A stretch of DNA of 64,000 bases, taken from Euprymna scolopes (lineage: Eukaryota). Shown here piece by piece: positions 20,301 through 56,900 of the stretch (position 1 is the stretch's first letter; each line of letters starts with the position of its first letter). A model generated the notes under the pieces. It was not told the DNA's origin and ran no database searches. It saw nothing but the letters and a program-made list of their open reading frames with translations. The position numbers were made by a program, and so were the translations under genes. Location: the NCBI GenBank assembly GCA_053919585.1, contig CM132815.1; one strand, given 5' to 3'.

Positions 20301-23300
20301 TTAAATGGTAATTGGAGTAATCCTGAAAATTTCTCTATGTGTGTATAATATGGAGTTAAATGGTAATTGGAGTAATCCTGAAAATTTCTCTATGTGTGTA
20401 TAATATTGAGTTAAATGGTAATTGGAGTAATCCTGAAAATTTCTCTATGTGTGTATAATATGGAGTTAAATGGTAATTGGAATAATCCTGAAAATTTCTC
20501 TATGTGTGTATAATATGGAGTTAAATGGTAATTGGAGTAATCCTGAAAATTTCTCTATGTGTGTATAATATGGAGTTAAATGGTAATTGGAGTAATCCTG
20601 AAAATAGCTCTATGTGTGTATAATATGGAGTTAAATGGTAATTGGAGTAATCCTGAAAATTTCTCTATGTGTGTATAATATGGAGTTAAATGGTAATTTG
20701 AGTAATCCTGAAAATTTCTCTATGTGTGTATAATATGGAGTTAAATGGTAATTGGAGTAATCCTTAAAATTTCTCTATGTGTGTATAATATGGAGTTAAA
20801 TGGTAATTTGAGTAATCCTGAAAATTTCTCTATGTGTGTATAATATGGAGTTAAATGGTAATTGGAGTAATCCTGAAAATTTCTCTATGTGTGTATAATA
20901 TGGAGTTAAATGGTAATTGGAGTAATCCTGAAAATTTCTCTATGTGTGTATAATATGGAGTTAAATGGTAATTGGAGTAATCCTGAAAATTTCTCTATGT
21001 GTGTATAATATGGAGTTAAATGGTAATTGGAGCAATCCTGAAAATTTCTCTATGTGTGTATAATATGGAGTTAAATGGTAATTGGAGTAATCCTTAAAAT
21101 TTCTCTATGTGTGTATAATATGGAGTTAAATAGTAATTGGAGTAATCCTGAAAATTTCTCTATGTGTGTATAATATGGAGTTAAATGGTAATTGGAGTAA
21201 TCCTGAAAATTTCTCTATGTGTATATAATATGGAGTTAAATGGTAATTGGAGCAATCCTGAAAATTTCTCTATGTGTGTATAATATGGAGTTAAATGGTA
21301 ATTGGAGTAATCCTGCAAATTTCTCTATGTGTGTATAATATGGAGTTAAATGGTAATTGGAGCAATCCTGAAAATTTCTCTATGTGTGTATAATATGGAG
21401 TTAAATGGTAATTGGAGCAATCCTTAAAATTTCTCTATGTGTGTATAATATGGAGTTAAATGGTAATTGGAGTAATCCTGAAAATTGCTCTATGTGTGTA
21501 TAATATGGAGTTAAATGGTAATTGGAGTAATCCTGAAAATTTCTCTATGTGTGTATAATATGGAGTTAAATGGTTATTGGAGTAATCCTTAAAATTTCTC
21601 TATGTGTATATAATATGGAGTTAAATGGTAATTGGAGCAGTCCTGAAAATTTCTCTATGTGTGTATAATATGGAGTTAAATGGTAATTGGAGCAATCCTG
21701 AAAATTTCTCTATGTGTGTATAATATGGAGTTAAATGGTAATTGGAGCAATCCTTAAAATTTCTCTATGTGTGTATAATATGGAGTTAAATGGTAATTGG
21801 AGTAATCCTGAAAATTGCTCTATGTGTGTATAATATGGAGTTAAATGGTAATTGGAGTAATCCTGAAAATTTCTCTATGTGTGTATAATATGGAGTTAAA
21901 TGGTTATTGGAGTAATCCTTAAAATTTCTCTATGTGTATATAATATGGAGTTAAATGGTAATTGGAGCAGTCCTGAAAATTTCTCTATGTGTGTATAATA
22001 TGGAGTTAAATGGTAATTGGAGCAATCCTGAAAATTTCTCTATGTGTGTATAATATGGAGTTAAATGGTAATTGGAGCAATCCTGAAAATTTCTCTATGT
22101 GTGTATAATATGGAGTTAAATGGTAATTGGAGCAATCCTGAAAATTTCTCTATGTGTGTATAATATGGAGTTAAATGGTAATTGGAGCAATCCTGAAAAT
22201 TTCTCTATGTGTATATAATATGGAGTTAAATGGTAATTGGAGCAATCCTGAAAATTTCTCTATGTGTGTATAATATGGAGTTAAATGGTAATTGGAGTAA
22301 TCCTGAAAATTTCTCTATGTGTGTATAATATGGAGTTAAATGGTAATTGGAGTAATCCTGAAAATTTCTCTATGTGTGTATAATATGGAGTTAAATGGTA
22401 ATTGGAGTAATCCTGAAAATTTCTCTATGTGTGTATAATATGGAGTTAAATGGTAATTTGAGTAATCCTGAAAATTTCTCTATGTGTGTATAATATGGAG
22501 TTAAATGGTAATTGGAGTAATCCTGAAAATTTCTCTATGTGTGTATAATATGGAGTTAAATGGTAATTGGAGTAATCCTGAAAATTTCTCTATGTGTGTA
22601 TAATATGGAGTTAAATGGTAATTGGAGCAATCCTGAAAATTTCTCTATGTGTGTAAAATATGGAGTTAAATGGTAATTGGAGTAATCCTGAAAATTTCTC
22701 TATGTGTGAATAATATGGAGTTAAATGGTAATTGGAGTAATCCTGAAAATTTCTCTATGTGTGTATAATATGGAGTTAAATGGTAATTGGAGCAATCCTG
22801 AAAATTTCTCTATGTGTGTATAATATGGAGTAAAATAGTAATTGGAGTAATCCTGAAAATTTCTCTATGTGTGTATAATATGGAGTTAAATGGTAATTGG
22901 AGTAATATTGAAAATTTCTCTATGTGTGTATAATATGGAGTTAAATGGTAATTGGAGTAATCCTGAAAATTTCTCTATGTGTGTACAATATGGAGTTAAA
23001 TGGTAATTGGAGTAATCCTGAAAATTTCTCTATGTGTGTATAATATTGAGTTAAATGGTAATTGGAGTAATCCTGAAAATTTCTCTATGTGTGTATAATA
23101 TGGAGTTAAATGGTAATTGGAGCAATCCTGAAAATTTCTCTATGTGTGTATAATATGGAGTTAAATGGTAATTGGAGTAATCCTGAAAATTTCTCTATGT
23201 GTGTATAATATGGAGTTAAATGGTAATTGGAGCAATCCTGAAAATTTCTCTATGTGTGTATAATATGGAGTTAAATGGTAATTGGAGCAATCCTGAAAAT

Positions 23301-34993: not shown

Positions 34994-35462
34994 GGAGAAT
35001 TGTTAAACTTTAATAGATATCGTTGCCTTAGCAACTTAGCTACTGTTGATCTACATGGTATTGATTTTTATAATTAATTCAACTTAATTAATTAAACTTC
35101 CACCAGCAAATTCATTATCGTGTCAAAACGACAGACCAACAGTCTTAGCCTGTTATAATAATAATTTGAGTCATTATATGTTATGGCTAGCTATGGAATA
35201 GTTAGTATACAGAATTGATGTATAAAAGTGCAAATGAGTATACAGAAGTAGTGTATAAACGCGAAATAATTGAATGCACGCACTAAAACAAACGTGGCGA
35301 TCTGTGAAAACCATTCGCAATTTCGCGCGCGCAAAAATTGAATGCACGCGCGCACGAAAACAAACAATGCGACCAGCAAAAACAATACAGACTACATTGG
35401 ATAATAAAGGTCTTAACACCATTGCCCTTAGATTAAATTTAAAATCCTGTATATAAGAGTAT

Positions 35463-35651
35463 GTATTTATTTGCTTCCCCACTGAGCAAATTAGGCACAA
35501 GGCCGTTTTTTAATGTGGAGAGCGAAGGTGAAATGGGGACCAGCTATCCGGGGAGTAGGGGAGCTGGATAGTGATAATTGGTATGAAGGGTTGACCCTAC
35601 ATTGACCAATAACTTATATGCGGGGGCAACCCCACATATGGTCTTTGCTTG
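35463..35651 (-). mobile_element. Dispersed single copy of the 210-bp structured element (subtype A) arrayed at 51111-53195
   Basis: The reverse complement reads caagcaaagaccatatgtgggg...cggccttgtgcctaatttgctcagtggggaagcaaataaatac, collinear with the array unit. It lacks the 5' U2 fold-back hairpin. Confidence 0.9.
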
Positions 35652-35879
35652 ACACTTGTTGCCCAGGCCCCGAGGGGTGTAATCCGTTGAAAAGAATTAA
35701 AAAGAAAAACCGAAAAGAAAAAAAATACACCCTGTGTGTTTGTTTCTTTGTTTGTTTATGTATGTGTGCGTGTTAACAGACTTAACAATATTAGGAAATA
35801 ATAATTAACTGATTAAGTAATATTTAACGGTGAGACCTTTTAAAAGCAAATCGAAAAAAAAAAATGAAAAGTACCCCAC

Positions 35880-42644: not shown

Positions 42645-43150
42645 TACATGTATTTATTCAATTGTATGAAGCATAAATGTCTTACTTGTGTGGTCTGTGA
42701 CCATATCCATTATATTTCGGGAAAAGTTTCCCTTTTCAAACGGATCTATTCAAAGCATGCTGGATGCTTTGCATAGATACCCTCGAGGATAAGGATAAAT
42801 AAATGAAAGGTGGTAGTGTAGTAATCGTTAATGGTTTAAATTGGGTAGAATTTTATTATTTGTTGGGACGACTCAACAAAAACTTGTTTACATTGGATTT
42901 GAAGGCTACCATGTTGTATTTAACCGAGAAGCAGACCAGCGGAACAGTGTTCCACAGGCGGGAAATTCTAGGAAAGAAGTTTTGTTCGTGGAATATACGT
43001 TTAGATTTAGACACAGATAGAAAGTGGGGGAAGTCGTTTATAGTGGTTGTAGCTAGTCGAGTATGTTTTGTGAAAGTTTGGCAATATGGAACTATAGTTT
43101 GGAGCTCAGTCGAGCACTATTTATCAATATGTTGAGAATGAATTGTCGTG
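42645..43150 (-). mobile_element. 3' fragment of a CR1/L2-group LINE
   Basis: The minus strand translates CSTELQTIVP...FHEQNFFPRISRLWNTVP...FKSNVNKFL; aataaa lies near 42653-42658 on the minus strand. Confidence 0.7.
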
Positions 43151-43652
43151 CTATAAGTAAATATACGCATCTCAGGCTCGATTACACAAGGAAAAGCCAT
43201 TTATGTATTTCTTCTAATGTCTGTTTATTTACTTTTGTTACGTCTCTGTTAATTTCTTGTAGTCAGATGAAACTCGCATAGTCAGACGGCTTACTTTGAT
43301 ACTAAAAGAATCTTCGTTTTTCAAGCAATTTTTTTTTACCTCCCAAAAACTTTAATGTTTTTGATGACTGAATCGTGGAAAAATGTCTTTAAAAAAACAT
43401 TCTCTCAACGAAACGATTTTTTTTTCTGAATGCTTTCTTTTTGCATTTTTAGAGACCATTATTATCATCTATAATCTACATGAGTAGGTTCGCATGCTTA
43501 TTTTTGATGCTGTCAGATTACTTCACGTGATGACGCGTCATAAAAAGTAAGTATTTACTATTGTACTAGTAAAATATACGTCATTGCCTGTATAGCATGT
43601 TCGTATATCAATACTACAATCAAACTTTTTTTTAAAATTTTTTTTTCTTCAG

Positions 43653-43729
43653 ATCCCTTCACAGAACTTGGCCTTCGGGACAAGATCAAAGTGCAATTCG
43701 GGACAAGATCAAAGTGTAGTATCTGTTCT
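43653..43729 (+). pseudogene. U2 snRNA 5' fragment / U2-derived target sequence with an internal 20-bp duplication
   Basis: aagatcaaagtgtagtatctgttct (43705-43729) matches invertebrate U2, including the GUAGUA branch-point recognition sequence. atcccttc and cttggcc-ttcg-ggacaag resemble the U2 5' end and stem-loop I. ttcgggacaagatcaaagtg is present twice (43674, 43697). No U2 3' half is seen. Confidence 0.85.
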
Positions 43730-44078
43730 CTGATACATACACAGCGATAGGCAGTGTTGTTCTGGCGACACATTCTCGTGCCCGGCGAGCTTGTTGGGTA
43801 GCGTTCTGTCCGCACCCCCACTTGGTCTGTCTTTCTCTGCTCTCCCCCCTCACGGGGGGATCCGAGCTGATAATTTACGACCTTCCCGCGAGGGAGGGTC
43901 GGAAACACTTTCTCTCTTCCCTCCACTAACTTCCCACTCCCTCTCTCAGTTCTATCTCCCCTCTTGCCGCCTTTGGCGCCACTTCTTTTTGGCGCCAAAG
44001 TCGGCTCCCACTTTGGACGCCGACTCCACGTCACTCATTTTGGTGAATTATACAGGGAAGAGAGAGCTTTTTTCAAAA

Positions 44079-47009
44079 ATGGACACCCCCAACCCGGGGA
44101 CCACCAATAGCGATACCCCCAGCCAGGGGGCTACCACAAGAAAAACTGCTCCCCAAGAGGACGACTCCCCAACAGGGGAAGCAAAAAGCAACGGGGCATA
44201 CCGCCCGGACACTAAACCGAAGGACGCCCCCCAGAAGGGAGAAAACTCACCAGCAGCTCCCCAAGAGGGCGACTCCCCACAAAGGGGAGAAAAAACAATG
44301 TTGGACGGGGCATCCCGTTCCGACAATAAAAATCAAGAGGCAGTAGCCCCAAAGGACGATAAGGGAGACAGTGCTCCCCAAGAGGGCGACTCCCCACAAA
44401 GGGGAGAAAAAACAATGTTGGACAGGGCATCCCGCTCTGACAACAAAAATCAAGAGGCAGTTGCCCCAAAGGACGATAAGAGAGACAGTGCTCCCCAGGA
44501 GGGCTACTGCCCCAAAAGGGGAGTAAATCAAGAAAACGAGGGAGCATACAGCCTAGACCCCCCCCAAAAAAAAACAAAAGGGGCAAAAGCTCCCAAGGAC
44601 AATAAAGAGGACAATGCTCCCCAGGAGGCCGACTCCCCAAAAAGGGAAATATTTCCTGGAAGAAGTATAGAGCAGGGAGAGTCGGTCCCAAAGGAAAGCG
44701 GAAAGGGAAATGCCCCTCAAAATAGCAACCCTTCCGCCAAGGAACAGCAAAAACAGTCCAACCTCACCAAAGATCCAACACCAACAAGAGGGTCGGCATG
44801 GGGGAAGACTGTAGAGAAGCAACTGTCCCCTCAAGAGTATAGAGACTTGTACTTGACCAAGTACAGACAATACATAGAGGGGGCAGAAATTAAACCAGTG
44901 CCAGGCGCTTGGGAGGCAATCGAAGACATAGTGCTCTCCCTCATCATCTCGGATATGCCGGAAAACCGCCTCCTAGGGATGAAAAAGGAAGACATGGCAG
45001 GGCTCCTACACAAGCTAAACATCCCGGTATTATACCTGTACCAGAGGAGCTACGCCATGTGGGACATCCTCCTACCCACCAAGGAAGATGCGGAGAGACT
45101 CTCCCTACAGGAAATTAAGTATGGGAGAATAAAACTAAAGCCCGAATACCAGGGCAGGACAAGGACCCGGGTGCAGGTATTCAATGTACCTATGCAAATA
45201 TCAGCAGAAATCCTGGGATCCTTCTTCACACAGTTCGGCGAGGTGGAAAAAATAACCCCAGTGCGGTCGAAAACCGGCATGCACTTGGGCAGCTACACTG
45301 TGGTCATGAGGCTTAAGAAAGAAGGCTTCCAGGCGATACCAGCACAGCTGACATTTAAGGAGGCAACTATGACAGTAGTAGTGGAGGGGCGTCGTCCGCA
45401 CTGCTGGTTCTGCCAAAAACAGGGTCACATGGCCAAGAGCTGCCCTCAAAGGTCAACTCCTACTCAAGTGACACTAAAGGCGGTCCCAACCTCTGAGACA
45501 GCACCAGTGTCCAAACAGGCTGTCACAACTCCTGCAACCGGAGCACCAACCCCAGCACCGAGGAAACCCAAAACTGTGCAGGAGGCCAAAGGGGAGGAAT
45601 GGATCACGGTAATGAGGCGGAAATGGAAGCCCACAATCCCATCTGCCACCGTCCCACAACCAACCCAACAACTGAGGCAGCAACAACAACAGCAGCCTCC
45701 ACAACAGCCGCAGCAACAGCCATGGCAGCAGACACAGCAGCAGCAGCCAAACCAGCCGTTGAACCAGCCGCAGCAACAACATCAGCTGCCGCGGCCAATG
45801 CCACAACCAATGCCACGAAAACAGCGGCAACAACAAAAACAGCAGCAGCAGCAACAGCCAGAACAGCAGCAGCAGCAACAAAAACGGCTGCAGCAACCAG
45901 AAAAGCAACAGCACCAACCGGAGAAACAACATCTAGAGGAGCAGCAACAACCAACGGTCCCCACACCAATTGAGACGGGGATCAAGCGAAGAAAACACTG
46001 CTCCTCTGAGGATGAATCTGCTAGTGAGAGGGAGAGGAACTCAACCTCACCACTCCCCGGTTCATTCAAAAGAATAAAAAAGAAAAGGAAAGGGGAAGAA
46101 AAGGCAGCCCCCACTCCCTGTGAGCATACACCACCTCTAACAACAACACAACCCACTTCCACCCCCATACCACATACTGCACCAACACTAGACACCGCAC
46201 TAACACCAACACCAACATCAGACACCGCACCAACACCAGACACTGCACCAACACCAGAAACTGCACCAACACCAACACCAGACACCGCACCAACACCAAC
46301 ACCAGACACCACACCAACACCAGACACCGCACCAACACCAACACCAACACCAGACACCACACCAACACCAGACACCGCACCAACACCAACACCAGACACC
46401 ACACAGACACTCGTCCCCACACCAATGCAAATTGAGCCGCCATCCCAGAAAGAAAAGAATGAACCCGGGAGGGGGAGAGACCCTTCAGATTCTCCCACTT
46501 ACGGACTCACTCCAACAGGGACTCTCGCCCTCGAAACGAGAGAGGAACTTTGTTTTGTAGACCCCCTGTCTGTGGCAATGGGCTTACCACACCGGCAGAG
46601 AAAAAATTTAAAACCTCTGCTGGACTTCCAACAGATAGGGGGAAAAGACGTTAATGTCCCCTCTAATTTCCCGGACGCCCCACGGCTAACAACTTTCGTC
46701 AGGCTTCCTGAGGCCTGCAAAACCAACGTGTGGACAATGCTGGAAGCCGCTGAAGGGGCTGGTCCGGGAATTGAACTGATTAGGAAAAATGACCCTTCCC
46801 TTGAGGAACTCGCAAAACAATGCAAGGGAAGGGTCCCAGTGTTGGTCCATCCGTCACTCTATAGGGCCCTTAAATTGACTTACCCTTTGAATGTCGGCGG
46901 CATTGTGAGAGAAGGTCAGGACATGAAAAACCTGACCACCTTGAGCATTGCACACAACGTCGGTGTCCTTTCCCCGGCTGACTTCGGAGCTGAGTGTAAC
47001 ACACCTTAA
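44079..47009 (+). CDS. LINE ORF1 nucleic-acid-binding protein, 976 aa from first ATG
   Basis: Intact frame with an RRM-like segment RVQVFNVPMQISAEILGSFFTQFGEV and zinc knuckle CWFCQKQGHMAKSC (45402-45443). It also has 39-aa N-terminal repeats, a polyQ tract, basic KRIKKKRK and DTAPTP repeats. Confidence 0.88.
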   Translation: MDTPNPGTTNSDTPSQGATTRKTAPQEDDSPTGEAKSNGAYRPDTKPKDAPQKGENSPAAPQEGDSPQRGEKTMLDGASRSDNKNQEAVAPKDDKGDSAPQEGDSPQRGEKTMLDRASRSDNKNQEAVAPKDDKRDSAPQEGYCPKRGVNQENEGAYSLDPPQKKTKGAKAPKDNKEDNAPQEADSPKREIFPGRSIEQGESVPKESGKGNAPQNSNPSAKEQQKQSNLTKDPTPTRGSAWGKTVEKQLSPQEYRDLYLTKYRQYIEGAEIKPVPGAWEAIEDIVLSLIISDMPENRLLGMKKEDMAGLLHKLNIPVLYLYQRSYAMWDILLPTKEDAERLSLQEIKYGRIKLKPEYQGRTRTRVQVFNVPMQISAEILGSFFTQFGEVEKITPVRSKTGMHLGSYTVVMRLKKEGFQAIPAQLTFKEATMTVVVEGRRPHCWFCQKQGHMAKSCPQRSTPTQVTLKAVPTSETAPVSKQAVTTPATGAPTPAPRKPKTVQEAKGEEWITVMRRKWKPTIPSATVPQPTQQLRQQQQQQPPQQPQQQPWQQTQQQQPNQPLNQPQQQHQLPRPMPQPMPRKQRQQQKQQQQQQPEQQQQQQKRLQQPEKQQHQPEKQHLEEQQQPTVPTPIETGIKRRKHCSSEDESASERERNSTSPLPGSFKRIKKKRKGEEKAAPTPCEHTPPLTTTQPTSTPIPHTAPTLDTALTPTPTSDTAPTPDTAPTPETAPTPTPDTAPTPTPDTTPTPDTAPTPTPTPDTTPTPDTAPTPTPDTTQTLVPTPMQIEPPSQKEKNEPGRGRDPSDSPTYGLTPTGTLALETREELCFVDPLSVAMGLPHRQRKNLKPLLDFQQIGGKDVNVPSNFPDAPRLTTFVRLPEACKTNVWTMLEAAEGAGPGIELIRKNDPSLEELAKQCKGRVPVLVHPSLYRALKLTYPLNVGGIVREGQDMKNLTTLSIAHNVGVLSPADFGAECNTP

Positions 47010-47019
47010 GGTAGGTACC

Positions 47020-50000
47020 ATGGCTTTGAATTTGGCTAGTCTGAATGCGAGGGGCTTGAGATCATCGGGCCGGGCGGCTCGCGACCGGCACGACCTCTTG
47101 TCCCTGGGAGTGGATGTTGCTGCGATTCAGGAGACGCATTTCGTTTCCTCTGTGGACTGTCAGGTGCTGGCCCGAGACTTTGAGGTTTTCTCAGCATATG
47201 GCAGCCCGCGGGGGAAGGGAGTTTCCGTGTTGGTTAAACGTACCCTGTCGGCGACGGTCGACGTTGTCCATAGAGATGCGGTGGGTAGGCTGGTTGTGGC
47301 CGATGTTGCCGTAAAAGATTCTGTGTTTCGGGTGATTGCGGTTCATGCGCCCAGCACCGCTCGTGAGAGGGTCTCATTCTTCAGTCAGCTTGACGCGTTT
47401 GTAGATTGTCGGAAGCGGGTAGTGCTAATGGGGGATTGGAATTCCATCTTAGACCCCGACATAGATAAGGTAGGAGGCGGAGCTAGAGGATCGGAGAGGT
47501 GCGAGTCCAGCCTGGCTGATCTGATGGCTAGATGCGGTCTGGTCGACAGGTTTCGGTTTGAGCATCCAGGGCGGGAGATGTGGACGTGGACCAATAGTGT
47601 TTCCTCCTATCCAAATACTTATTTGGACAGGATGTTAGTTAGGAAAGGCGAAGTAGACTTCTTATCTTGTCCCACGTTCACTTGGCTAGGCCAGACGGAC
47701 CATAAATTAGTTATGGCCCGGCTGAAGCTAGGAAATAGGCCTAAGTTAGCAGGGTACTGGAAGTTAAACACCTCCCTTCTGGAGATACAAGACTTCCAAG
47801 ATCAGTTAAGAGAATTGATTAAAAAGGCACTAGTGGGGGCGGTTACCGGGAGTAAGTGGTGGTTAGGTCTCAAAGCCAAGATCAGAAGCTTCTCCGTCAA
47901 GTATGCGCAGCGCCTCGCACTAGATAAGGCCAAGACGAAGAAGAAGCTAGAGCAGAAACTAGCCCAGGCTACGGGGGAGGGTGATAGGGTTAGTCAGGAA
48001 CTAGCTAAGCAGGACCTTCTACGCGAGACTAGCGAGCGTTACGAAGGCCAAGTAGTTAGAGCTAGGCTTAGAAAGATAGGCAACGAAGCAGTCAATTCTG
48101 ATGCAGACGTGCGCCGTGAGGTTTCTAGGCGTGGCTCGGACAAATACATTGCAAAAATCAAACATCCGAATGGACGCACCCTGGAATCGACTCGAGAGAT
48201 CTGCGAGGGGTTTCGAGAACATTTCGAGGAGCGTTTTACGCAGCAGCCCGATCTTCCGGTCCTTGAGTTTAGCGACTATTTGGCCGACTCTCCCCGCCTC
48301 GAGGCGGCTAGAGCGGCTGGTTGCGAGGGCCGGGTGACGGAGCAGGCGGTCTTTACTGCGCTGAAGCAGGTCAGCTGTGACAGATCGCCAGGACTTGATG
48401 GTCTGCCATACGAACTGTACTTGAGGCTGTCGCCCATGTTTCTGCCTCTTCTGACGGATATGTTCAACCATTGGTTTGCTCAGGGATCCATCCCAGGTGA
48501 CCAAGGGAGTGATCACATTGCTGAAGAAAGGTGACGGGCATGGAGGGGAAGAGTTAGACGACTACAGGCCCATAACTCTGCTAAACACAGTTGAAGATTT
48601 TGGCCAAGGTCCTGTCGAATCGGCTGCAGGTTGTTATCGACGAGTTGGTTGAACCGGAACAGAACTACGCTGTGAAGGGGAGATCGATTCAGAACAACTT
48701 GCACCTGATCCGCATGATCCTAGAGGGGGAATAGATGACGACACGGAAGCCGCGCTGATAAACTTAGATCAGTCCAAAGCTTTCGATAGGGTCGACCATC
48801 GTTTCCTGGCATCTGTCTTAGAGGCCGCCGGTTTTAAACCGGACTTTTGCAAGTGGATCTCCATAATGTATCGACAGCCCATGGCTGTCGTGCAAGTCAA
48901 CGGGAAGCGCTCGAAACCCTTTGTTATCTCTCGGTCGGTTCGTCAGGGTTGTCCGCTGTCGCCCCTGCTTTATGTCCTGGCTTTGGAGCCTCTTCTCCGC
49001 AAGCTGAGACATGGGGAGGCAAATTCGGCCCTGCGCGGAATGGCTCTGCCTGGCGGCTCAGCTGCCAAGGTATCCGCGTTCGCCGATGATGTCACGATCT
49101 TCGTGTCGGGCTTCAGAGACATTGAGGTCGTGTCGGAGGCACTCACACAGTACGAAAGAATTACAGGGGCCAAGATAAACAAGTCGGTAGGACTGCGGTT
49201 GGGCGCATGGAGTGGCAACGCAAACCTCCCTGCGCCTTTCAGCTGGACAGATGGCCCGGTCCGGATCCTCGGCGTGTGGTTCGGACCGGGTCTCCAGCTT
49301 GACAAGAATTGGTTGGAGGTACGGTCAAAGGTGGAGGCTGCAGTCAATTCGTGGCTTCCTAGGAAACTTTCCTTAAAGGGTAGAGCTGAGGCGTGCGCCA
49401 CTTACGTCTTTCCTCTCATCCTTTACCGACTGGCCGTACTTCCCCTGCCTGCACAACACCTAAAAGCTCTTGTCGAACTCTTGTCCTCGCTCCTTTGGGA
49501 CAGAGGAAGACACTGGGTGAGCAGACAGGTCTGTATTCAACGTCCGTGTGAGGGAGGCTTGGGAATGCCGGACTTGAAGTGTCATCGAGATGCTGAGAGG
49601 CTGGCCTTCCTGAGCCACTATATGCAGGAGGACCAACCGTGGCACCCCGTGGTTACTGCCGCCTTCCCCGACCTCGTTCTCGACCCTTCCATCGAGAGCC
49701 GTCGCAGGCCGCGGGGAGAATCTGCCTACATGAAAGAGTGCCGAGCCGCGCTAAAACGACTACCAAGGTCCAGTGACCTTGTGACTGCTACCCGTAGGGA
49801 ACTCCACAGGGATCTAGTGAAGGGGGCCGCTGACGACCCGCTATGCGCGCGTTTGAGGTGGCAGCAGAGTGAGATCCGCTCCGCGTGGAGCTGGGCGCCA
49901 GGTTCGAGTCATCTGAACAATTCGGAGTTCTCTCTGACCTGGCGATTGGCCCTAAATGCACTTCCACTCAACAACATACAATGCAGTTCTGGGTTTCTGG

Positions 50001-50443
50001 AGTCGCCTGATTGTCCCCGTTGTGGGACAACGGCTGTGGAAACTACGGATCACGCTTTCTTCGATTGCCGCGAACTCCGCCAGTACTGGTCGTATGTCAG
50101 TGGGGTGACGGCTCGCATCGATCCTGAGCATCCTCGCCCAATTACTGTATCCAATGTTGTGGACAACGTGAGGCCGCCGTGGGACCGGGAAAGACAAATG
50201 GTCTACGTTACGATTCTGGCCGTGGCGAGAATGGTGATTTGGACGTCGCGTCTGCAAGGTTGCCGGGGGGTGTTGTCTTTTTCTGATCAAGATCTGATCG
50301 CGTTCTTTAAACACCAACTACGGGTGAAGATCAGATGTGATAGAAGAAGGCTGCATCGCGCGGCATTTGACAGAAGATGGATACATGTGGCAAGTCTGTG
50401 TGTACGAAGAGGAGCCAAATTTGAATACGTGTTCCCCGCCTAG
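47020..50443 (+). pseudogene. LINE ORF2 (AP-endonuclease, reverse transcriptase, CCHC) with three frameshifts near 48497, 48590 and 48730
   Basis: APE motifs SLNARGL, IQETH, MGDWN, YLDRML and TDH. RT motifs SPGLDGLP, YRPITLLN, LDQSKAFDRVDH, RQGCPLSPLLY and FADD. C-terminal CPRC...ETTDHAFFDC. The ATG follows the ORF1 stop after a 10-nt spacer. Confidence 0.93.
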
Positions 50444-51110
50444 GTGTGGAACGCGTAGTTCTGTAAAGTTAAATTAAACAAGTAGTCTCTCAGCTAGCTG
50501 AGTGTGTGTTCCATCCCTCCCCGATTAGGAAGCCTCCAAGATCCCCATCCCCTCTTACCTGCAATTTTTGTTTTCACCCCTTCCTCTAAATTTTACCCAT
50601 CTTGGAGAAAAAGAAATACAAACTAACCTCCATCCCTTACCCACAAAATTTTCTTTTCTCCATTCACCCCCATCTAGAGGGCATCCCCACCTAGAGACTG
50701 ACCCGCAGAAGCGAGGTTCCTTTTACAAACCTAGTGGAACGGGCAGTCTATCAACTAGACGGGGTTGGGAGGGTCCTACTAATCACCTTTTGTTTTTTCT
50801 TCCCCCTCCCTCGACACAAATGAATTATTGTTACCATTTTATTGTTATCTTTTTTGTTTTTACACGTCAATAAAAAATGTTTTAAAAATTGGGAGTTACT
50901 AGGACGTCCCCCAATATGAAAGGGTGAATGCGGTATTATGGTGAAAGAAGATACTAGCTGGGAGAAACTTTTGACTTTGTTTAGTTCTGGAGTGACAAGG
51001 ATGACCAACGACCCCCAAAATCCCCCTTTTGAGTTGGCCATGTGCCTAAGTTTTTTGTTCACCGTTGATTTTTTTCTGTATTTTTTTAACATGAATAAAA
51101 GATTTAATAT

Positions 51111-53195
51111 ATCAAAGTGTAGTATCTGTTCCGGCAGATACTGCAAGCAAAGACCATATGTGGGGGCAACCCCACATATAAGACCTTGGTCAATGTAGGG
51201 GCAACCCTTCATACCAATTGTCACTATCCAGCTCCCCTACTCCCCGGGGAGTTGGTCCCCAGTTCCCCTTCACTCCTCACTTTAAAAATCGGCCTTGTGC
51301 CTAATTTGCTCGGTGGGGGAGCAAATAAATACCATCTGTTCCGGCAGATACTGCAAGCTATGACTAGCTATGACTAGCTATGACTAGAAAAGACCAGATG
51401 TGGGGGCAACCCCACATGCCTGACCTTTAACCAGCTCCCATTTCCCACCTCTCGGGAGCTGGTCCCCTTTTTCCCTTCCCCCTCCCTTCACTCCTCACAT
51501 TAAAAATTGGCCTTGTGCCTAATTTGCTCGGTGGGGGAGCAAATAAATACCATCTGTTCCGGCAGATACTGCAAGCAAGGACCATATGTGGGGGCGTCCC
51601 CACATATAAGACCTTGGTCAATGTAGGGGCAACCCTTCATACCAATTGTCACTATCCAGCTCCCCTGCTCCCCGGGGAGTTGGTCCCCATTTCCCCTTCA
51701 CTCCTCACATTAAAAATCGGCCTTGTGCCTAATTTGCTCGGTGGGGTAGCAAATAAATACCATCTGTTCCGGCAGATACTGCAAGCAAAGACCATATGCG
51801 GGGGCGACCCCACATATAAGACCTTGATCAATGTAGGGGCAACCCTTCATACCAATTGTCACTATCCATCTCCCCTACTCCCCGGGGAGTTGGTTCCCAT
51901 TTCCCCTTCACTCCTCACATTAAAAATCGGCCTTGTGCCTTATTTGCTCGGTGGGGTAGCAAATAAATACCATCTGTTCCGGCAGATACTGCAAGCAAAG
52001 ACCATATGTGGGGGCGACCCCACATATAAGACCTTGGTCAATGTAGGGGCAACCCTTCAGACCAATTGTCACTATCCAGCTCCCCTACTCCCCGGGGAGC
52101 TGGTCCCCATTTCCCCTTCACTCCTCACATTAAAAATCGGCCTTGTGCCTAATTTGCTCGGTGGTGTAGCAAATAAATACCATCTGTTCCGGCAGACACT
52201 GCAAGCAAAGACCCTATGTGGGGGCGACCCCAGAGATAAGACCTTGGTCAATGGAGGGGCAACCCTTCATACCAATTGTCAATATCCAGCTCCCCTACTC
52301 CCCCGGGGAGCTGGTCCCCATTTCCCCTTCACTCCTCACATTAAAAATCGGCCTTGTGCCTAATTTGCTCGGTGGGGGAGCAAATAAATACCGTATCTGT
52401 TCCGGCAGATACTGCAAGCAAAGACCCTATGTGGGGGCAACCCCACAGATAAGACCTTGGTCAATGGAGGGGCAACCCTTCATACCAATTGTCACTATCC
52501 AGCTCCCCTACTCCCTGGGGAGTTGGTCCCCATTTCCCTTTCACTCCTCACATTAAAAATCGGCCTTGTGCCTAATTTGCTCAGTGGGGCGAGCAAATAA
52601 ATACCTCAAAGTGTAGTATCTGTTCCGGCAGATGCTGCAAGCTATGACTAGCTATGACTAACAAAGACCAGATGTGGGGGCAACCCCACATGCCTGACCA
52701 TTAACCAGCTCCCATTTCCCACCTCTCGGGAGCTGGTCCCCTTTTTCCCTTCCCCCTCCCTTCACTCCTCACATTAAAAATCGGCCTTGTGCCTAATTTG
52801 CTCGGTGGGGGAGCAAATAAATACCATCTGTTCCGGCAGATACTGCAAGCAAAGACCATATGTGGGGGCGACACCATATATAAGACCTTGGTCAATGTAG
52901 GGGCAACCCTTCATACCAATTGTCACTACCCTACTCCCCGGGGAGTTGGTCCCCATTTCCCCTTCACTCCTCACTTTAAAAATCGGCCTTGTGCCTAATT
53001 TGCTCAATGGGGGAGCAAATAAATACCTCAAAGTGTAGTATCTGTACTTCAGATGCTGCACTTCTATTTCTTGTTCACTTTCGGTGGAGGAGAAATCCTT
53101 CACGACTGAGACAATTTTTATTTTTGTACCTTTTCTCCACGTTAAAAAACGACCCTGGTGTCTAACTCTGTCCCGTGGGGAGGCATAGTAAATAG
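51111..53195 (+). mobile_element. Tandem array of 10 short structured non-coding elements (order A B A A A A A B A C), probable non-autonomous partners of the Tx1 LINE
   Basis: Unit starts at 51111/51124, 51334(B), 51552, 51762, 51972, 52182, 52393, 52606(B), 52826 and 53028(C). The A period is 210 bp. Each unit begins with U2-derived (tcaaagtgtagt)atctgt and ends in ggccttgtgcctaa-hairpin-taaata (degenerate in C). Confidence 0.8.
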
Positions 53196-53540
53196 GTACA
53201 TTAATTGCCTCTGTTAAACTATTATGATAAAAAATTACATTCCTTGTGTTCTGAAATAGTTCCTTCTGATTGGACAAGAGATTTCTCTCTGAGTAATCAA
53301 CAAGCAATTATTATTTATTTTTTATGGCGGATGGAATAAAAAGGTTTTGTTTGTTTTCGTTTTTATGTGGTATCTGGCCAGTCAACACAACAAGGGACCT
53401 ACTCCTCATTTTTAATCGGTGTTTATTAGAGTGAAACGTATTCCTAGATTTGTCTTGTTCAATGAACAATTATATCAAGAGCTGGTATTTTATTAATTAG
53501 TTTAGCAACAAGTATTTCTTCTCTTACAGTTTCAGTTAAC

Positions 53541-53756
53541 TACACGGGCGGTAAAAAGAAAGTACGCACTTGTAATTTTTTTCAAAAACTGCAAATGTAA
53601 GCCAAATTTAATGTAACTGTTTAAACAAACTATACCTCATTTGATTGGACTTATAGAGAAATAAAAGACGAATCAAATGAGGTATAGGTTGTTTAAACAG
53701 TTACATAAAATTTTGAAAAAATTACAAGTGAGGACTTTCTTTTTGCCGGCACTGTA
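53541..53756. mobile_element. Tc1/mariner-type MITE, almost fully palindromic
   Basis: Left end ta-cacgggcggtaaaaagaaagtacgcacttgtaattttt versus right-end reverse complement ta-cagtgccggcaaaaagaaagtcctcacttgtaattttt. Inner arms atgtaactgtttaaacaa.ctatacctcatttgatt are also inverted. TA at both ends. Confidence 0.9.
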
Positions 53757-53924
53757 TATTACAGCATTTTAAAACGTTTAGAAAACAAACGAACCTTATG
53801 CAATTTATCTAAGGCTATTGTGTTCCTCTTCGATGATATTCTTAAAACATTTCTGCTGAGGTAACTTGCGGTCTTCCTCAGATGAATTTCGTTGGACTAT
53901 CTGGAAGTCTCACATTAACAGCGT

Positions 53925-56900
53925 AAATTAGAAACCTCACAAGAAAAAAAGGATAGTTGTCGTACCTGAACAATGTGTGATCAATACAAATTTTTACATA
54001 TCCAAATTATGAATGTACAAGGTGAGTTCAATTAAAAACTTAACACCAGCAAAGTATGGATCGACTGGTAGGCGTACCTGAAAACTGTAAGATCAATTCA
54101 AAATCTTACTTATCCAAAGTATATATCAACAGTTAAGCTAACCGAGAAAATGTAAAATCAACTGAAAACCTTTACGTGAACAAAGTAGGGATCAACTGGT
54201 ACGCATACATGGACAATGCAAGGTAAATTAAAATCTTGAATAGTTAAAATATAGAACAACTCGTAGGCATACCTGTACAAAGAAAGATCAATTAAAAACA
54301 TCATATAAGCAAAGTATGAATGAACTGGTAGGCGTACCTGAAAACGTAAGAAAAATTAAAAACAAAACATAAACAAATTATAGATCGACTAGTAGGCGTA
54401 CTTGAACAATATAAGTAAAATTAAAGACATCAACTGAACAAAGTATACATTAACAAATAGGCTCACTTGACCAATGTAAGATCAATTAAAAACATCACAT
54501 CAAGAAAGTATAGATCGATAGGTAGGCGTACCTGAATAATATGAGATAAATTACAAAGATAGCACGAACAAAGTATTTATAAATTGGTAGGTGTATCTGA
54601 ATAACGTAAAATAAATTAATAACACCACATAACCAAAGTATGAACACTTGTATAAGTATGGATCAACGAGTAGGCGTAACTTAATACTATAAGATAAATT
54701 GACAAAATCACGTGCACAAAAAATAGATTAACTGAGAGGCGTACTTGAACACTATCACATTAATTAAAAACATCACGTGAACACAGCATTGATCAACTGG
54801 TAGGCAACGAAAACAACGAAAGATAATTTAAGAACCTCACATGAACGAAGTATTGATCAACTGATAGGTATATCTAGTCACCGTAAGATAAATTTAAAAA
54901 AGAATACATGAATAAAGTATGGATCAACTGGTAGGCGTACCTGAATAGTGTAAGATCAATTGAAAATTTTAAATTTCCAAACTATAAATCAACTTGTAGT
55001 TATACCTGAACAACGTAAGGTAAATAAAAAAAACATCAAATGAACCCCGTATGGTTTGCCTGATAGGCGTACCTCAACAATGATAATTAATGTGGATAAA
55101 CCGGTAGGCGTATCTAAACAATGTAAGGTGAATTAAAAACATCACATGCCTTAATAACGAAGGAAAAATTAAAAACATCACACGAACAATGTACACATCG
55201 ACTAGTAGGCGACCCTGAACACTGTAAGATAAATTAAAAACATCACTTGAACAAAATATGGATCAACTGGTATGTGTACCTGAACAATGCAACATCAATA
55301 AAAAGATTTAACATATAAAAAGTATGAATCGACTTGTAGGCATACTTGAACAACGTAAGATAAATTAAAAACCTCACACGAACGAAGTATGGACCAACAG
55401 GAAGTCGTACTTGAACACTGCCAGACAAATTTATGAGAGCACATGGACAAAGTAAGGAAAACTGGGTGGCATACTTGAAAAACGTAGAATCAATAAACAA
55501 AATTTAACATATTAAAAGTATAAATTAACTGGTATGTGTACTTGAAAACGTATAATAAATTAAAAACATCACACGAACAATGTATAAATCGACTGATAGG
55601 CGTATCTGAACACGTAATATAAATAAAATACATCACATGAACAAAGTATTGCTCAATTGGTAGGCGTATCTGAACATAGTAAGATAAATTTAAATGATTA
55701 CACAAACAAAGAATTGATCAACTGATAAATGGCAGAAACATTAGTGGATGACCGCCAATCTGTAGTGGAATGGAGACAAAAATGGATGGTCACATTCAAT
55801 GCTGCCAGGACTAAACTTGTTTCCTTCAATGACTACAAGAAACCTTCTCTACCACCAATAGCAATGGCCGAAGACTTTATCTGAAAGTATATATTTTAAA
55901 CTTCTCGGCCTAACGTTCACAGGACACATGAGTCGGAACAACTACATTGAGAGCATTGCCAGGACTGTTGCGAAAAAGGTAGGTTCTCTCTACCGTGCAA
56001 GAAAGCTACAAACGCCCGAAAGTGTCCTGTACCTCTATAAGGCCACCATTCACTCATGTATGGAGTATTGTTGTCATTTTTGGGCTGGTGCGTCTGCCAC
56101 TAGTCTCTCGCTCCTAGACAAGGTTCAAAAGAGAGTCGCAAACCTGATAGGTCCTGAACTGTCATTTAAGCTTCAGTTTCTGTCCCATCGACGATATGTA
56201 GCATCCCTCTGTCTGTTCTACAAGTACTTTAACGGTAAATGCTCCGACGAACTGCAAGCACTTGTACCCCCTTGACGTAAATACCCCCGACAAATCCGAC
56301 AAGCAGCAAAATCCCACCACTTCACAGTTGAGATCCCTAGATGTAAGAGAGCCTTCTACTTCAGTAGTTTCTTCCCCAGAACGGCTAGACTTTGGAATTC
56401 TCCTCCGGGTTTTTGCTTCCCCAACTGTACTGCCATGCAGAAGTTCAAGTGTAACGTGAACCGACATCTTGCTGCCCAACTCCCCACATAGTACCCCTGA
56501 TAGTAGCTCCCTGCATCAACGTGGCAATGTGCCTTGTTTGGGGTGAAAATGTAATAATAAAAAAGCGTACCTTAACACTATATGATAAATTATTAACATC
56601 AACTAAAGAAAAATAGACAAAATGGTATACGTAATTGAACAACGTTAGATAAATTATAAACCTCACAAGAACGAAGTATGATTCAACTGGTAGGCGTACC
56701 TGAACAGTGTAAGCTCAATTAAAAAGTTTTCATATAAAAAATATGGATAAAATGGTGGACATTCTGGAACAATGTAAGATAAATTAAAAAGACATCGCAC
56801 GAACAAAGTATTGATCAACTGATAGGCGTACCTGAAGAGTGTCAGATAAATGAAAAACATACCATATACAAAAGATAGATCGATAGGTAGGCTCACCTGA

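What the first reader, a model, noticed from the sequence alone, without database searches (positions are those of the whole stretch)
51119..51144. 5' ends of LINE, A/B and C elements each fold back on the U2 branch-point recognition sequence
A/B: gtagtatctgt-tccg-gcagatactgc (11 bp including G-U pairs). C: aagtgtagtatctg-tactt-cagatgctgcactt (14 bp, 53031-53063). LINE: gtgta-gtatc-tgttctct-gatac-a-tacac (43714-43743). Three different sequences produce a similar hairpin that would sequester GUAGUA in a read-through transcript. Possible roles (inference) are neutralising a splicing-interfering U2 chimera, marking a processing site, or aiding 5' junction formation. For the LINE, tctgatac could also be U2 sequence with an internal deletion.
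Basis: partly seen in the sequence, partly recalled or inferred. Interest (0 to 1): 0.72.

Follow-up and report, generated by a model that had tools for sequence, protein, structure and literature searches.

The report
Fold-back hairpin on U2 leader
A jumping gene that homes into U2 spliceosomal RNA genes, and the short elements that ride on it, start with a copied piece of U2 followed by a backwards copy of that piece, so their RNA folds into a hairpin; the hairpin is real and inherited, but no function was shown.

Summary
Random tails rarely give this (about 1e-4 for A/B, 2e-3 for the LINE). They are family features, not one-off junctions. A second LINE copy and a sister species carry the same LINE hairpin. 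RNA reads show four short-element subfamilies with the same 3' arm behind a leader present about 30,000 times.

The three sequences are not independent inventions. Each 3' arm is a diverged antisense copy of the U2 leader, starting at the same CAG after a loop derived from U2 43-47. In the dominant C-type family the inverted copy runs 25 nt and gives a 23-bp hairpin of about -30 kcal/mol.

My reading is a fold-back junction aberration at a U2 insertion, propagated because the template RNA includes the leader. It then persisted as the first stem of a hairpin-rich 5' RNA.

Evidence that the RNA stem is maintained is only suggestive: all changes among the short elements are G.U, and the plus strand folds better. 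Nothing supports a ribozyme, a processing site or an effect on splicing.

A marine U2-linked LINE family and a limpet LINE inside U5 genes show similar hairpins across the element-host junction. The scan noted this hairpin before on other DNA of this genome.

The parts
43653..43730 (+). U2-derived leader of the LINE. It starts at U2 nt 1 and contains an internal duplication (43674-43693 and 43697-43716). It includes the branch-point recognition sequence GUAGUA at 43716-43721.
   Evidence: The Rfam U2 model aligns from model position 1, well below the gathering score. Sequence. Read depth is about 30,000 times single copy over 43678-43718.
43714..43742 (+). LINE fold-back hairpin: 5' arm 43714-43723 (U2), loop 43724-43731, 3' arm 43732-43742 with A43737 bulged.
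   Evidence: Fold. Identical in L005 and in the organism B RNA contig. A variant contig changes only the bulge and turns one G-C into G.U (table 3).
43743..51109 (+). Body of the Tx1/Keno-like LINE. It has a structured 5' UTR, ORF1 (43791-47009, CCHC knuckle), an APE endonuclease ORF (46948-48534) and an RT plus zf-RVT ORF (48866-50443). ORF2 is broken between the last two. The 3' tail ends ...gatttaatata.
   Evidence: Pfam hits, ORFs, sequence.
51110..53028 (+). Head-to-tail array of nine A/B short units of about 210 bp. Each ends ...gcaaataaatacc and is followed by U2 sequence from nt 38/39 (atctgttc) or from nt 27/28 (tcaaagtg).
   Evidence: alignment A1.
51118..51145 (+). A-type fold-back hairpin, the finding's own coordinates widened by one pair: 12 bp with a UCCG loop.
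   Evidence: It persists in the fold of the whole unit.
52612..52639 (+). B-type fold-back hairpin. It is the same stem with A>G at 52634, which turns an A-U pair into G.U.
53029..53195 (+). C-type short unit. Its hairpin is 53031-53063. The sequence after the arm continues as a diverged antisense copy of U2.
   Evidence: (25-nt inverted alignment, p 0.0015).
35460..35690 (-). Dispersed A-type copy in which the top of the hairpin (23 nt) is missing. The deletion end points are almost symmetric in the stem.

Best explanation
The hairpin is the stem of a palindromic leader. These elements insert at fixed bases of U2 sequence, and their template RNA carries the upstream U2 piece as a leader. Directly behind the leader sits an inverted (antisense) copy of U2 nt about 42 back to 29, and back to about 19 in the dominant C-type family. 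Leader and body therefore pair, burying GUAGUA.

I infer that the inverted copy arose as a fold-back (snap-back) synthesis error at an insertion junction, seeded by the small natural U2 hairpin CUG(40-42)/CAG(50-52). It became heritable because junction sequence that lies inside the template RNA is copied into every daughter. The LINE and the A/B and C short elements then inherited or exchanged it.

In RNA it is the first of a row of stable hairpins in the 5' region. It seems to be at least tolerated and probably mildly maintained, since only G.U-type changes are seen among the short-element families.

Shown here: the structure, its family-level inheritance, its antisense-U2 nature, and its presence in RNA. 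Inferred: the fold-back origin, propagation through a co-transcript, and any maintenance by selection. No function was shown.
For: 1. Family-level inheritance. The LINE hairpin is identical in a second copy (L005) and in a sister species' RNA contig. Loose ends behind the leader in raw RNA reads give four subfamilies with the arm CAGATRCTRCA(CTT), in 333, 45, 31 and 14 reads. Their loops differ: UUCUU, UCCG, UUCUC, UUUUU.

2. Antisense-U2 nature.
- The C-type tails align as reverse complement to 23 nt of the leader, p <= 0.0015.
- With a full leader they fold into a 23-bp interrupted hairpin of -30 to -32 kcal/mol.
- L002, a LINE 65% identical in the endonuclease, has 14 of 21 post-loop bases equal to perfect antisense U2, by my own count from the sequence. 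A local alignment gives a 12-of-15 segment, p 0.03.
- All arms start at CAG or CTG after a 4-6-nt loop that matches U2 43-47.

3. Same pivot in an unrelated lineage. A marine Tx1-like LINE family (L128, L130, L131; three samples) has U2 nt 40-84 (Rfam E 1.5e-5). It is preceded directly by a perfect antisense copy of U2 53-66. Together they form a 17-bp hairpin whose loop is U2 43-49, z -7.5. This is the mirror image of the window's case around the same CUG/CAG micro-hairpin.

4. Leader in the template. The LINE leader begins at U2 nt 1 next to single-copy flank. In R2, junction aberrations are propagated when the RNA keeps upstream target sequence (PMC3774820, Discussion).

5. RNA level.
- All differences among the short-element arms are A<->G opposite U.
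- The plus strand folds much better than the minus strand: -30.4 vs -18.5, -16.3 vs -5.4, -20.2 vs -11.4.
- The A/B loop is UNCG-like.
- The hairpin survives in the whole-unit fold among other hairpins.
- 16-18 polyA RNA reads cover the LINE arm unchanged.
Against: - The loops are 2-3 nt shorter than U2 43-49, so a simple fold-back from nt 52 needs a later deletion.
- No individual one-off snap-back junction was seen, which the mechanism predicts should exist.
- The genuine U2 gene of this species and a LINE copy inside it were not available. The top-strand nick position is therefore unknown.
- L002 has three pair-breaking changes in the core stem, so maintenance is not strict.
- The limpet U5 case fits snap-back poorly (it needs two deletions). 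It looks more like selected pairing.
- The count of pair-preserving events is small: at least 3, p about 0.05 under a 2:1 transition bias (my calculation).
Confidence: 0.5

Rival explanations
1. Selected RNA module. The element's 5' end has been shaped by selection to pair with the host-gene leader. The pairing would mask the U2 leader (GUAGUA and the U6-pairing bases) in chimeric transcripts, or provide a 5' handle that marks correctly inserted, co-transcribed copies. The origin of the arm would then be secondary.
For: - G.U-only variation among the SINE subfamilies, and plus-strand asymmetry.
- The LINE variant contig changes the bulge and one G-C to G.U, then has 4 changes in the next 6 nt outside the arm.
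- The A/B loop is UNCG-type and the neighbouring loops are GNRA-type.
- L002 keeps an interrupted 15-bp fold-back.
- In the limpet U5-homing LINE, the first 16 nt pair with U5 nt 4-19. Two copies are identical; z -2.6, null P about 0.02.
- R2 elements likewise pair their 5' sequence with upstream 28S (PMC3774820).
Against: - No functional readout of any kind.
- L002 carries three disruptive changes.
- The statistics are marginal.
- A 6-nt GUAGUA in a long RNA without an Sm site is an unlikely threat to splicing (my knowledge).
- The marine family solves the supposed problem differently, and its hairpin lies at another junction.
Confidence: 0.27
2. The hairpin marks or forms part of a self-cleaving ribozyme or another RNA processing site. 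This would free the element from the U2 co-transcript, as the HDV-like ribozyme does for R2.
For: - Analogy with R2, where P1 pairs upstream 28S with R2 sequence (PMC3774820).
- Several units in the array begin exactly at tcaaagtg, just 5' of the stem.
Against: - No ribozyme family matched at E<=10 over 43000-54000 or at gathering score.
- The loop is 4-8 nt, whereas HDV-like P1 and P1' are at least 23 nt apart and enclose P2 and P3 (PMC3774820).
- No pile of read starts or ends in raw RNA reads (table 6).
- tcaaagtg always follows an element 3' end, so it reads as a second insertion site at U2 27/28.
Confidence: 0.05
3. There is no special event. The arm is left-over U2 stem-loop IIa sequence after an internal deletion, plus chance complementarity.
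For: - The LINE's tctgatac equals U2 60-67, and the CAG of the short elements equals U2 50-52 (Rfam consensus).
- U2 GUAUC(36-40) happens to be complementary to GAUAC(63-67).
Against: - U2 supplies at most 5-7 of the paired bases.
- The arms continue 5-11 nt further as antisense of U2 29-35, which does not occur in sense U2.
- The C-type inverted alignment spans 23 nt of the leader.
- Null tests gave 1e-4 to 2e-3.
Confidence: 0.07
4. DNA-level role. The palindrome places a mirror image of the nick site (AGA|TAC) on the other strand. This would serve second-strand nicking or inverted insertions. Alternatively, the A>G changes were selected to destroy that mirror site.
For: - The 3' arm GCAGA|TACTGC nearly equals the bottom-strand target ACAGA|TACTAC (sequence).
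- The two variable A/G positions lie just 3' of the mirrored nick.
Against: - No 14-bp target duplication and no inverted unit is seen in the array.
- No strand-changing joints were listed.
- G.U asymmetry points to RNA.
Confidence: 0.05

Closest known systems
Keno (Tx1-clade, APE-type, U2 snRNA gene-specific LINE) and Utopia (RLE-type, same site)
   Same: The 3' junction lies at U2 nt 38/39, followed by (A)TCTGTTC, exactly the site given for Utopia and Keno (PMC4640811 section 6 and S3 Fig). The LINE has APE, RT and zinc-finger domains. Tandem insertions into U2 sequence are also seen.
   Different: A second site at nt 27/28 is also used. The elements carry the U2 piece as their own leader and so re-create the target. 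A fold-back arm behind the leader is not mentioned in PMC4640811: a search of its main text found no 'hairpin'.
SINEU (snRNA-headed SINEs of crocodilians, mobilised by Tx1-Mar)
   Same: Short non-coding retroposons with a U2-derived head and a Tx1-type partner. They have no internal promoter, and transcription from the flank has been proposed (PMC4494074).
   Different: Here the host is a mollusc, and the head is the partner LINE's own landing site, so arrays build up. The head is followed by an inverted copy of itself. PMC4494074 contains no mention of hairpin, inverted or complementary.
R2 5' HDV-like ribozyme with P1 formed by upstream 28S rRNA sequence
   Same: An element's 5' sequence pairs with host-gene sequence retained on the co-transcript. 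The retained host sequence gives uniform 5' junctions and lets junction aberrations be inherited (PMC3774820).
   Different: R2's pairing is a 7-bp P1 inside a double pseudoknot, with at least 23 nt between the strands. Here it is a plain 10-23-bp hairpin with a 4-8-nt loop and no ribozyme signature.
U2 branchpoint-interacting stem-loop (BSL) of genuine U2 snRNA (Perriman and Ares 2010; my knowledge, not checked here)
   Same: An intramolecular stem around the GUAGUA region of U2.
   Different: The BSL uses U2's own flanking bases and presents GUAGUA in the loop. Here a foreign antisense strand pairs with GUAGUA itself.
Fold-back (snap-back) templated insertions in end joining, and self-primed snRNA retropseudogenes (Bernstein, Mount and Weiner 1983; polymerase theta literature; my knowledge, not checked here)
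   Same: A 3' end folds back on a few bases of microhomology and copies its own strand. This leaves an inverted repeat with a short loop at a junction.
   Different: Those are single events. Here the product is a heritable part of a mobile element present in tens of thousands of copies.

Membership tests
Keno / Tx1-clade U2-specific LINE | Apurinic-type endonuclease plus reverse transcriptase in ORF2, and ORF1 with a zinc knuckle | tested here: met
   Pfam Exo_endo_phos 1.1e-12, RVT_1 4.9e-10 and zf-RVT 8.6e-7. The zf-CCHC hit is weak, below the cutoff. ORF2 is interrupted between 48534 and 48866.
Keno / Tx1-clade U2-specific LINE | 3' junction at U2 nt 38/39 (flank TCTGTTC...) | tested here: met
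   Six of the nine A/B units are followed by atctgttc, one more (before 52393) by gtatctgttc, and two by tcaaagtg. The site is as in PMC4640811. The LINE copy itself is followed by tcaaagtg (nt 27/28), both here and in organism B.
Keno / Tx1-clade U2-specific LINE | Phylogenetic placement of the RT inside the Tx1 clade next to named Keno families | not tested
   No named reference sequences were at hand. The nearest full-length relatives are unnamed.
SINEU-like snRNA-headed SINE | Short, non-coding, 5' head derived from U1 or U2 snRNA | tested here: met
   The units are about 210 bp, and the head equals U2 up to nt 46-47.
SINEU-like snRNA-headed SINE | 3' tail shared with a partner LINE | tested here: met
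   The motif ggcc(a/t)tgtgcctaa occurs in the LINE 3' end (51040-51056) and in every unit. The extreme ends differ.
HDV-like self-cleaving ribozyme (as in R2) | Nested double pseudoknot, with P1 and P1' separated by P2, P3 and L3 (at least about 23 nt) | tested here: not met
   The arms are 4-8 nt apart. No HDV, CPEB3 or drz model matched at E<=10. A dedicated descriptor search was not run.
Genuine U2 snRNA gene | Full-length match to the U2 covariance model (stem-loops IIa to IV, Sm site) | tested here: not met
   No match at the gathering score in the window. The best score was 19.5 bits against 46. The sequence downstream of nt 47 is not U2.

The most novel reading that the evidence does not exclude
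Hairpins that span the element-host junction are a general, functional trait of snRNA-homing Tx1-like LINEs. Each element would encode an antisense copy of the host-gene flank it lands in: the U2 leader here, U2 stem-loop IIa in a marine relative, the U5 5' strand in a limpet. Only co-transcripts from correctly inserted copies would then fold into the structure the machinery uses for template choice, RNA stability or completion of the 5' end. This would be a ribozyme-free counterpart of R2's P1 pairing. The recurrent A>G changes at two UAC sites of the stem could be ADAR footprints showing that the stem forms in vivo.
Probability: 0.17. Interest if true: 0.75.

Novelty: new variant of a known kind. 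Interest (0 to 1): 0.5.

Why it matters
U2-homing LINEs and snRNA-headed SINEs are known, but how snRNA heads arise and what they do is open. PMC4494074 leaves their transcription unexplained.

This case shows that the head is the LINE's own landing site carried as a leader, and that it comes with an inverted copy of itself. If the fold-back origin is right, it is a clear example of a junction error turned into a heritable part of a very successful element family. It would also report on what the integration machinery does at nicked DNA ends.

If the stem is functional, it would extend the R2 principle, in which the element pairs with its host-gene flank, to Pol II snRNA genes and to APE-type LINEs. 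For genome annotation, it explains thousands of U2-like hits with a 'masked' branch-point sequence as retroposon heads rather than U2 variants.

Tried and rejected
- Rfam at gathering score on the whole window, and at E<=10 on 43000-54000. No ribozyme or other family covers the hairpins.
- HDV-like P1 reading. Rejected on topology, because the loop is too short.
- Metagenome scan for the U2 14-mer followed by non-U2 sequence. It returned genuine U2 genes of fungi and protists plus random bacterial matches, useful only as an empirical null. No LINE protein was found in any of these contigs by tblastn. Two contigs labelled human-gut metagenome (L012, L042) were left out of my scripts and not examined.
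- ORF1-based searches for more LINE 5' ends. There were few hits. L004 has no U2 head, and L125 and L126 do not reach the 5' end.
- L001 and L003 (closest ORF2 relatives) lack the 5' end.
- L129 carries an 11-mer like the U1 5' end. This is chance level (0.07 expected) with no U1 flank at the 3' side, so I dropped it.
- Read-start mapping. No pile of molecule starts or ends. The library chemistry is unknown, so the transcript strand is undecided.
- I could not decide whether the 470 nt upstream of the marine family's U2 piece is a tandem copy's 3' end or 5' UTR (no overlap of contig ends).
- A snap-back prediction for the limpet U5 junction fits only with two deletions. I did not count it as support for the mechanism.

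Full report
**What is in the window**

Positions 43653-51109 hold a LINE with an apurinic-type endonuclease, a reverse transcriptase and a zinc-finger tail (Pfam; ORFs). It is followed by a head-to-tail array of nine short A/B units of about 210 bp and one C unit, 51110-53195.

Six of the nine A/B units, each ending ...aaataaatacc, are followed by atctgttc, that is, U2 snRNA from nt 38/39. One more is followed by gtatctgttc. This is the insertion site reported for the U2-specific LINEs Utopia and Keno (PMC4640811, section 6 and S3 Fig). Three junctions, including the LINE's own 3' end, are followed instead by tcaaagtg (U2 nt 27/28).

The LINE begins with a U2-like leader that starts at U2 nt 1 (Rfam alignment) and abuts single-copy DNA (records 1-2). 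Runs labelled as mollusc hold the stretch.

**Check of the observation**

All three hairpins are present at the stated places and are the minimum-energy folds:
- A/B: 12 bp, UCCG loop, -16.3 kcal/mol, z -4.9.
- C: 14 bp, -20.2 kcal/mol, z -5.8.
- LINE: 10 bp plus a bulged A, -11.8 kcal/mol, z -2.2.

I joined the U2 head to 19,811 random 24-nt tails from the window. Only 2 reached -16 kcal/mol with GUAGUA fully paired, and 33 reached -11.8. In an empirical control of about 115 metagenome matches to the same U2 14-mer, genuine U2 genes left GUAGUA unpaired and one unrelated match reached the LINE's level.

So the hairpins are more than chance. One caveat: seven of the nine A/B units start at the insertion site and lack most of the 5' arm.

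**Is it conserved elsewhere?**

Yes.
- A second copy of the LINE 5' end (L005, 97% ORF1 identity) has the identical hairpin.
- A sister species' RNA contig shows no difference across it (X19).
- Laying reads on the LINE 5' end shows the leader at about 30,000 times single-copy depth.
- The loose ends behind the leader in raw polyA RNA reads sort into four families:
  - TCAGATGCTGCACTTCAATTTC... (333 reads, C-type)
  - CGGCAGATACTGCAAGC... (45 reads, A/B)
  - CAGATGCTACACTT... (31 reads)
  - TTTCAGATGCTGCACTT... (14 reads)
- The loops differ (UUCUU, UCCG, UUCUC, UUUUU, and UACUU in the window's C unit), while the arm is kept.
- A variant LINE contig changes the bulged A and turns the closing G-C into G.U. 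It then shows four changes in the next six bases outside the arm (table 3).

The scan had noted this hairpin before at other places in this genome.

**What the arms are**

They are not three unrelated sequences. Written against the perfect antisense of U2 nt 42-29 (CAGATACTACACTT):

| Family | 3' arm |
|---|---|
| C and major read families | CAGATGCTGCACTT |
| One read family | CAGATGCTACACTT |
| A | CAGATACTGCA |
| B | CAGATGCTGCA |
| LINE | CTGATAC(A)TACAC |
| L002 (related LINE, 65% identical in the endonuclease) | CAGTTACGAAACTT |

The C-type tails align as reverse complement to 23 nt of the leader, p <= 0.0015. With a full leader they fold into a 23-bp interrupted hairpin of -30 to -32 kcal/mol.

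All arms begin at CAG or CTG right after a short loop that matches U2 nt 43-47. In U2, CAG is nt 50-52 and pairs with CUG 40-42 (Rfam consensus). The module is therefore U2 leader, turn, then U2 read backwards.

**Origin**

The simplest way to get this is fold-back synthesis at an insertion junction: a 3' end at the U2 CUG/CAG micro-hairpin copies its own strand.

Independent support comes from a marine Tx1-like LINE family seen in three samples (L128, L130, L131). Upstream of ORF1 lies U2 nt 40-84 (Rfam E 1.5e-5). It is preceded directly by a perfect antisense copy of U2 53-66. Together they form a 17-bp hairpin whose loop is exactly U2 43-49, z -7.5. That is the mirror image of the window's arrangement around the same pivot.

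Such an aberration can be inherited if the template RNA contains the leader and the junction. This is argued for R2 elements whose RNA keeps upstream 28S sequence (PMC3774820).

The weak points are three. The loops are 2-3 nt shorter than U2 43-49. No single-copy snap-back junction was seen. I had neither the species' real U2 gene nor a LINE copy inside it.

**Is the RNA stem maintained?**

The evidence is suggestive, not strong.
- Among the short-element families only two arm positions vary. Both are A<->G opposite U and both sit in a UAC context. All four combinations occur.
- These changes keep the plus-strand RNA stem but break the minus strand: -30.4 vs -18.5, -16.3 vs -5.4, -20.2 vs -11.4 kcal/mol.
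- At least three pair-keeping events and no pair-breaking one gives p of about 0.05 under a 2:1 transition bias (my calculation).
- The A/B loop is UNCG-like, neighbouring hairpins carry GCAA loops, and the stem survives in the fold of the whole unit.
- Against this, L002 has three pair-breaking changes and keeps only an interrupted fold-back (-10.2 kcal/mol, z -1.9).
- The A>G pattern could also be a footprint of A-to-I editing of the RNA intermediate. That is my inference and was not tested.

**A possible wider pattern**

The nearest named relative of the LINE's ORF2 comes from the limpet Patella caerulea. There the element sits inside genuine U5 snRNA genes of a 3.4-kb tandem cluster:
- Rfam finds intact U5 at 17624-17738 and 21023-21138.
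- Interrupted U5 genes lie at 2725 and 22009 of L127.
- In both copies the first 16 nt of the element are an antisense copy of U5 nt 4-19, 13 of 16 identical. Two of the three changes give G.U.
- The junction folds at -18.2 kcal/mol, z -2.6. The null probability is about 0.02.

This is only suggestive. It does not fit a simple snap-back, and it hints that pairing between element and host-gene flank may be favoured in snRNA-homing LINEs.

**The proposed functions**

Nothing supports self-cleavage or a processing site.
- No ribozyme model matches.
- The loop is far too short for an HDV-like P1/P1' (PMC3774820 gives 23 nt as the smallest separation).
- Raw RNA reads show no pile of starts or ends (table 6).

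The idea that the stem neutralises a U2-like chimera could not be tested. I rate it unlikely as the main reason, because the leader lacks the Sm site and the rest of U2. Help with the 5' junction is plausibly a role of the leader itself, as in R2, not of the antisense arm.

**Verdict**

The hairpin is real, inherited and not previously described in the papers I could read. It is best seen as a palindromic U2 leader of a Keno-like LINE and its SINEU-like partners. The origin by fold-back is my favoured inference. A maintained RNA role is possible.

Noticed in passing
L127 (Patella caerulea, GCA_036850965.1) 2725-14295, 17624-17738, 21023-21138, 22009-: A Tx1-like LINE (27% identical to the window's endonuclease region) is inserted in loop I of genuine U5 snRNA genes in a 3.4-kb tandem cluster. 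The 5' junction is ...cgccttttac|gagtag and the 3' junction is ...gttaaag|ttactaaag. The source annotation lists eleven copies with neighbouring locus tags. I know of no described U5-specific LINE, but I did not search the literature for one.
   Followed up: partly
L128 465-522, L130 306-363, L131 211-268: A marine metagenome Tx1-like LINE family carries U2 nt 40-84 upstream of ORF1. It is preceded by a perfect antisense copy of U2 53-66, giving a 17-bp hairpin. The bases before it may be a U2 nt 1-20-like stretch, so the whole may be a rearranged U2 leader without the branch-point sequence.
   Followed up: partly
window 51109/51110, 52605/52606, 53028/53029: A second insertion site exists. 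Three element 3' ends, including the LINE's (and the LINE's in the sister species), are followed by tcaaagtg (U2 nt 27/28) rather than atctgttc (nt 38/39). Both sites read A|TC.
   Followed up: partly
window 35460-35690, minus strand: A dispersed A-type unit has a different, shortened U2-like head. The top 23 nt of the hairpin are missing, with nearly symmetric end points, as if a polymerase had jumped across the stem.
   Followed up: no
window 43674-43716: The LINE leader contains a direct duplication of ttcgggacaagatcaaagtg separated by caa. About 30% of the depth at 43703 (DNA contigs; less in the RNA runs) reads C instead of A, giving two leader variants.
   Followed up: no
window 2397-34984: A 55-bp satellite of 593 copies, 97% alike, with strong GC skew, fills half of the window.
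   Followed up: no
window 53607-53710: A near-perfect long hairpin of about 40 bp. It scores against plant and animal microRNA precursor models only below their thresholds and is probably an inverted-repeat element.
   Followed up: no
L115 5415-5450 and L081 760-800 (metagenome contigs): U2-like leaders (ggctatga..aagtgtagtatctgt) are followed at once by actaca or ctgcact, the antisense of the branch-point recognition sequence (7-bp stems). They are not U2 genes by Rfam, and no LINE protein was found nearby. Their nature is unknown.
   Followed up: partly
window 43760-44050: In the raw polyA RNA run, first mates lie about 5-10 times more often on the plus strand over the LINE 5' UTR. The library chemistry is unknown, so sense or antisense transcription is undecided. 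Parts of the 5' UTR (43800-43960) are themselves repeated thousands of times in DNA contigs, so short elements seem to share them.
   Followed up: no
window 48534-48866: ORF2 of this LINE copy is interrupted between the endonuclease/N-terminal part and the RT part, so this copy is probably dead. Related transcripts are nevertheless present in several RNA runs.
   Followed up: no
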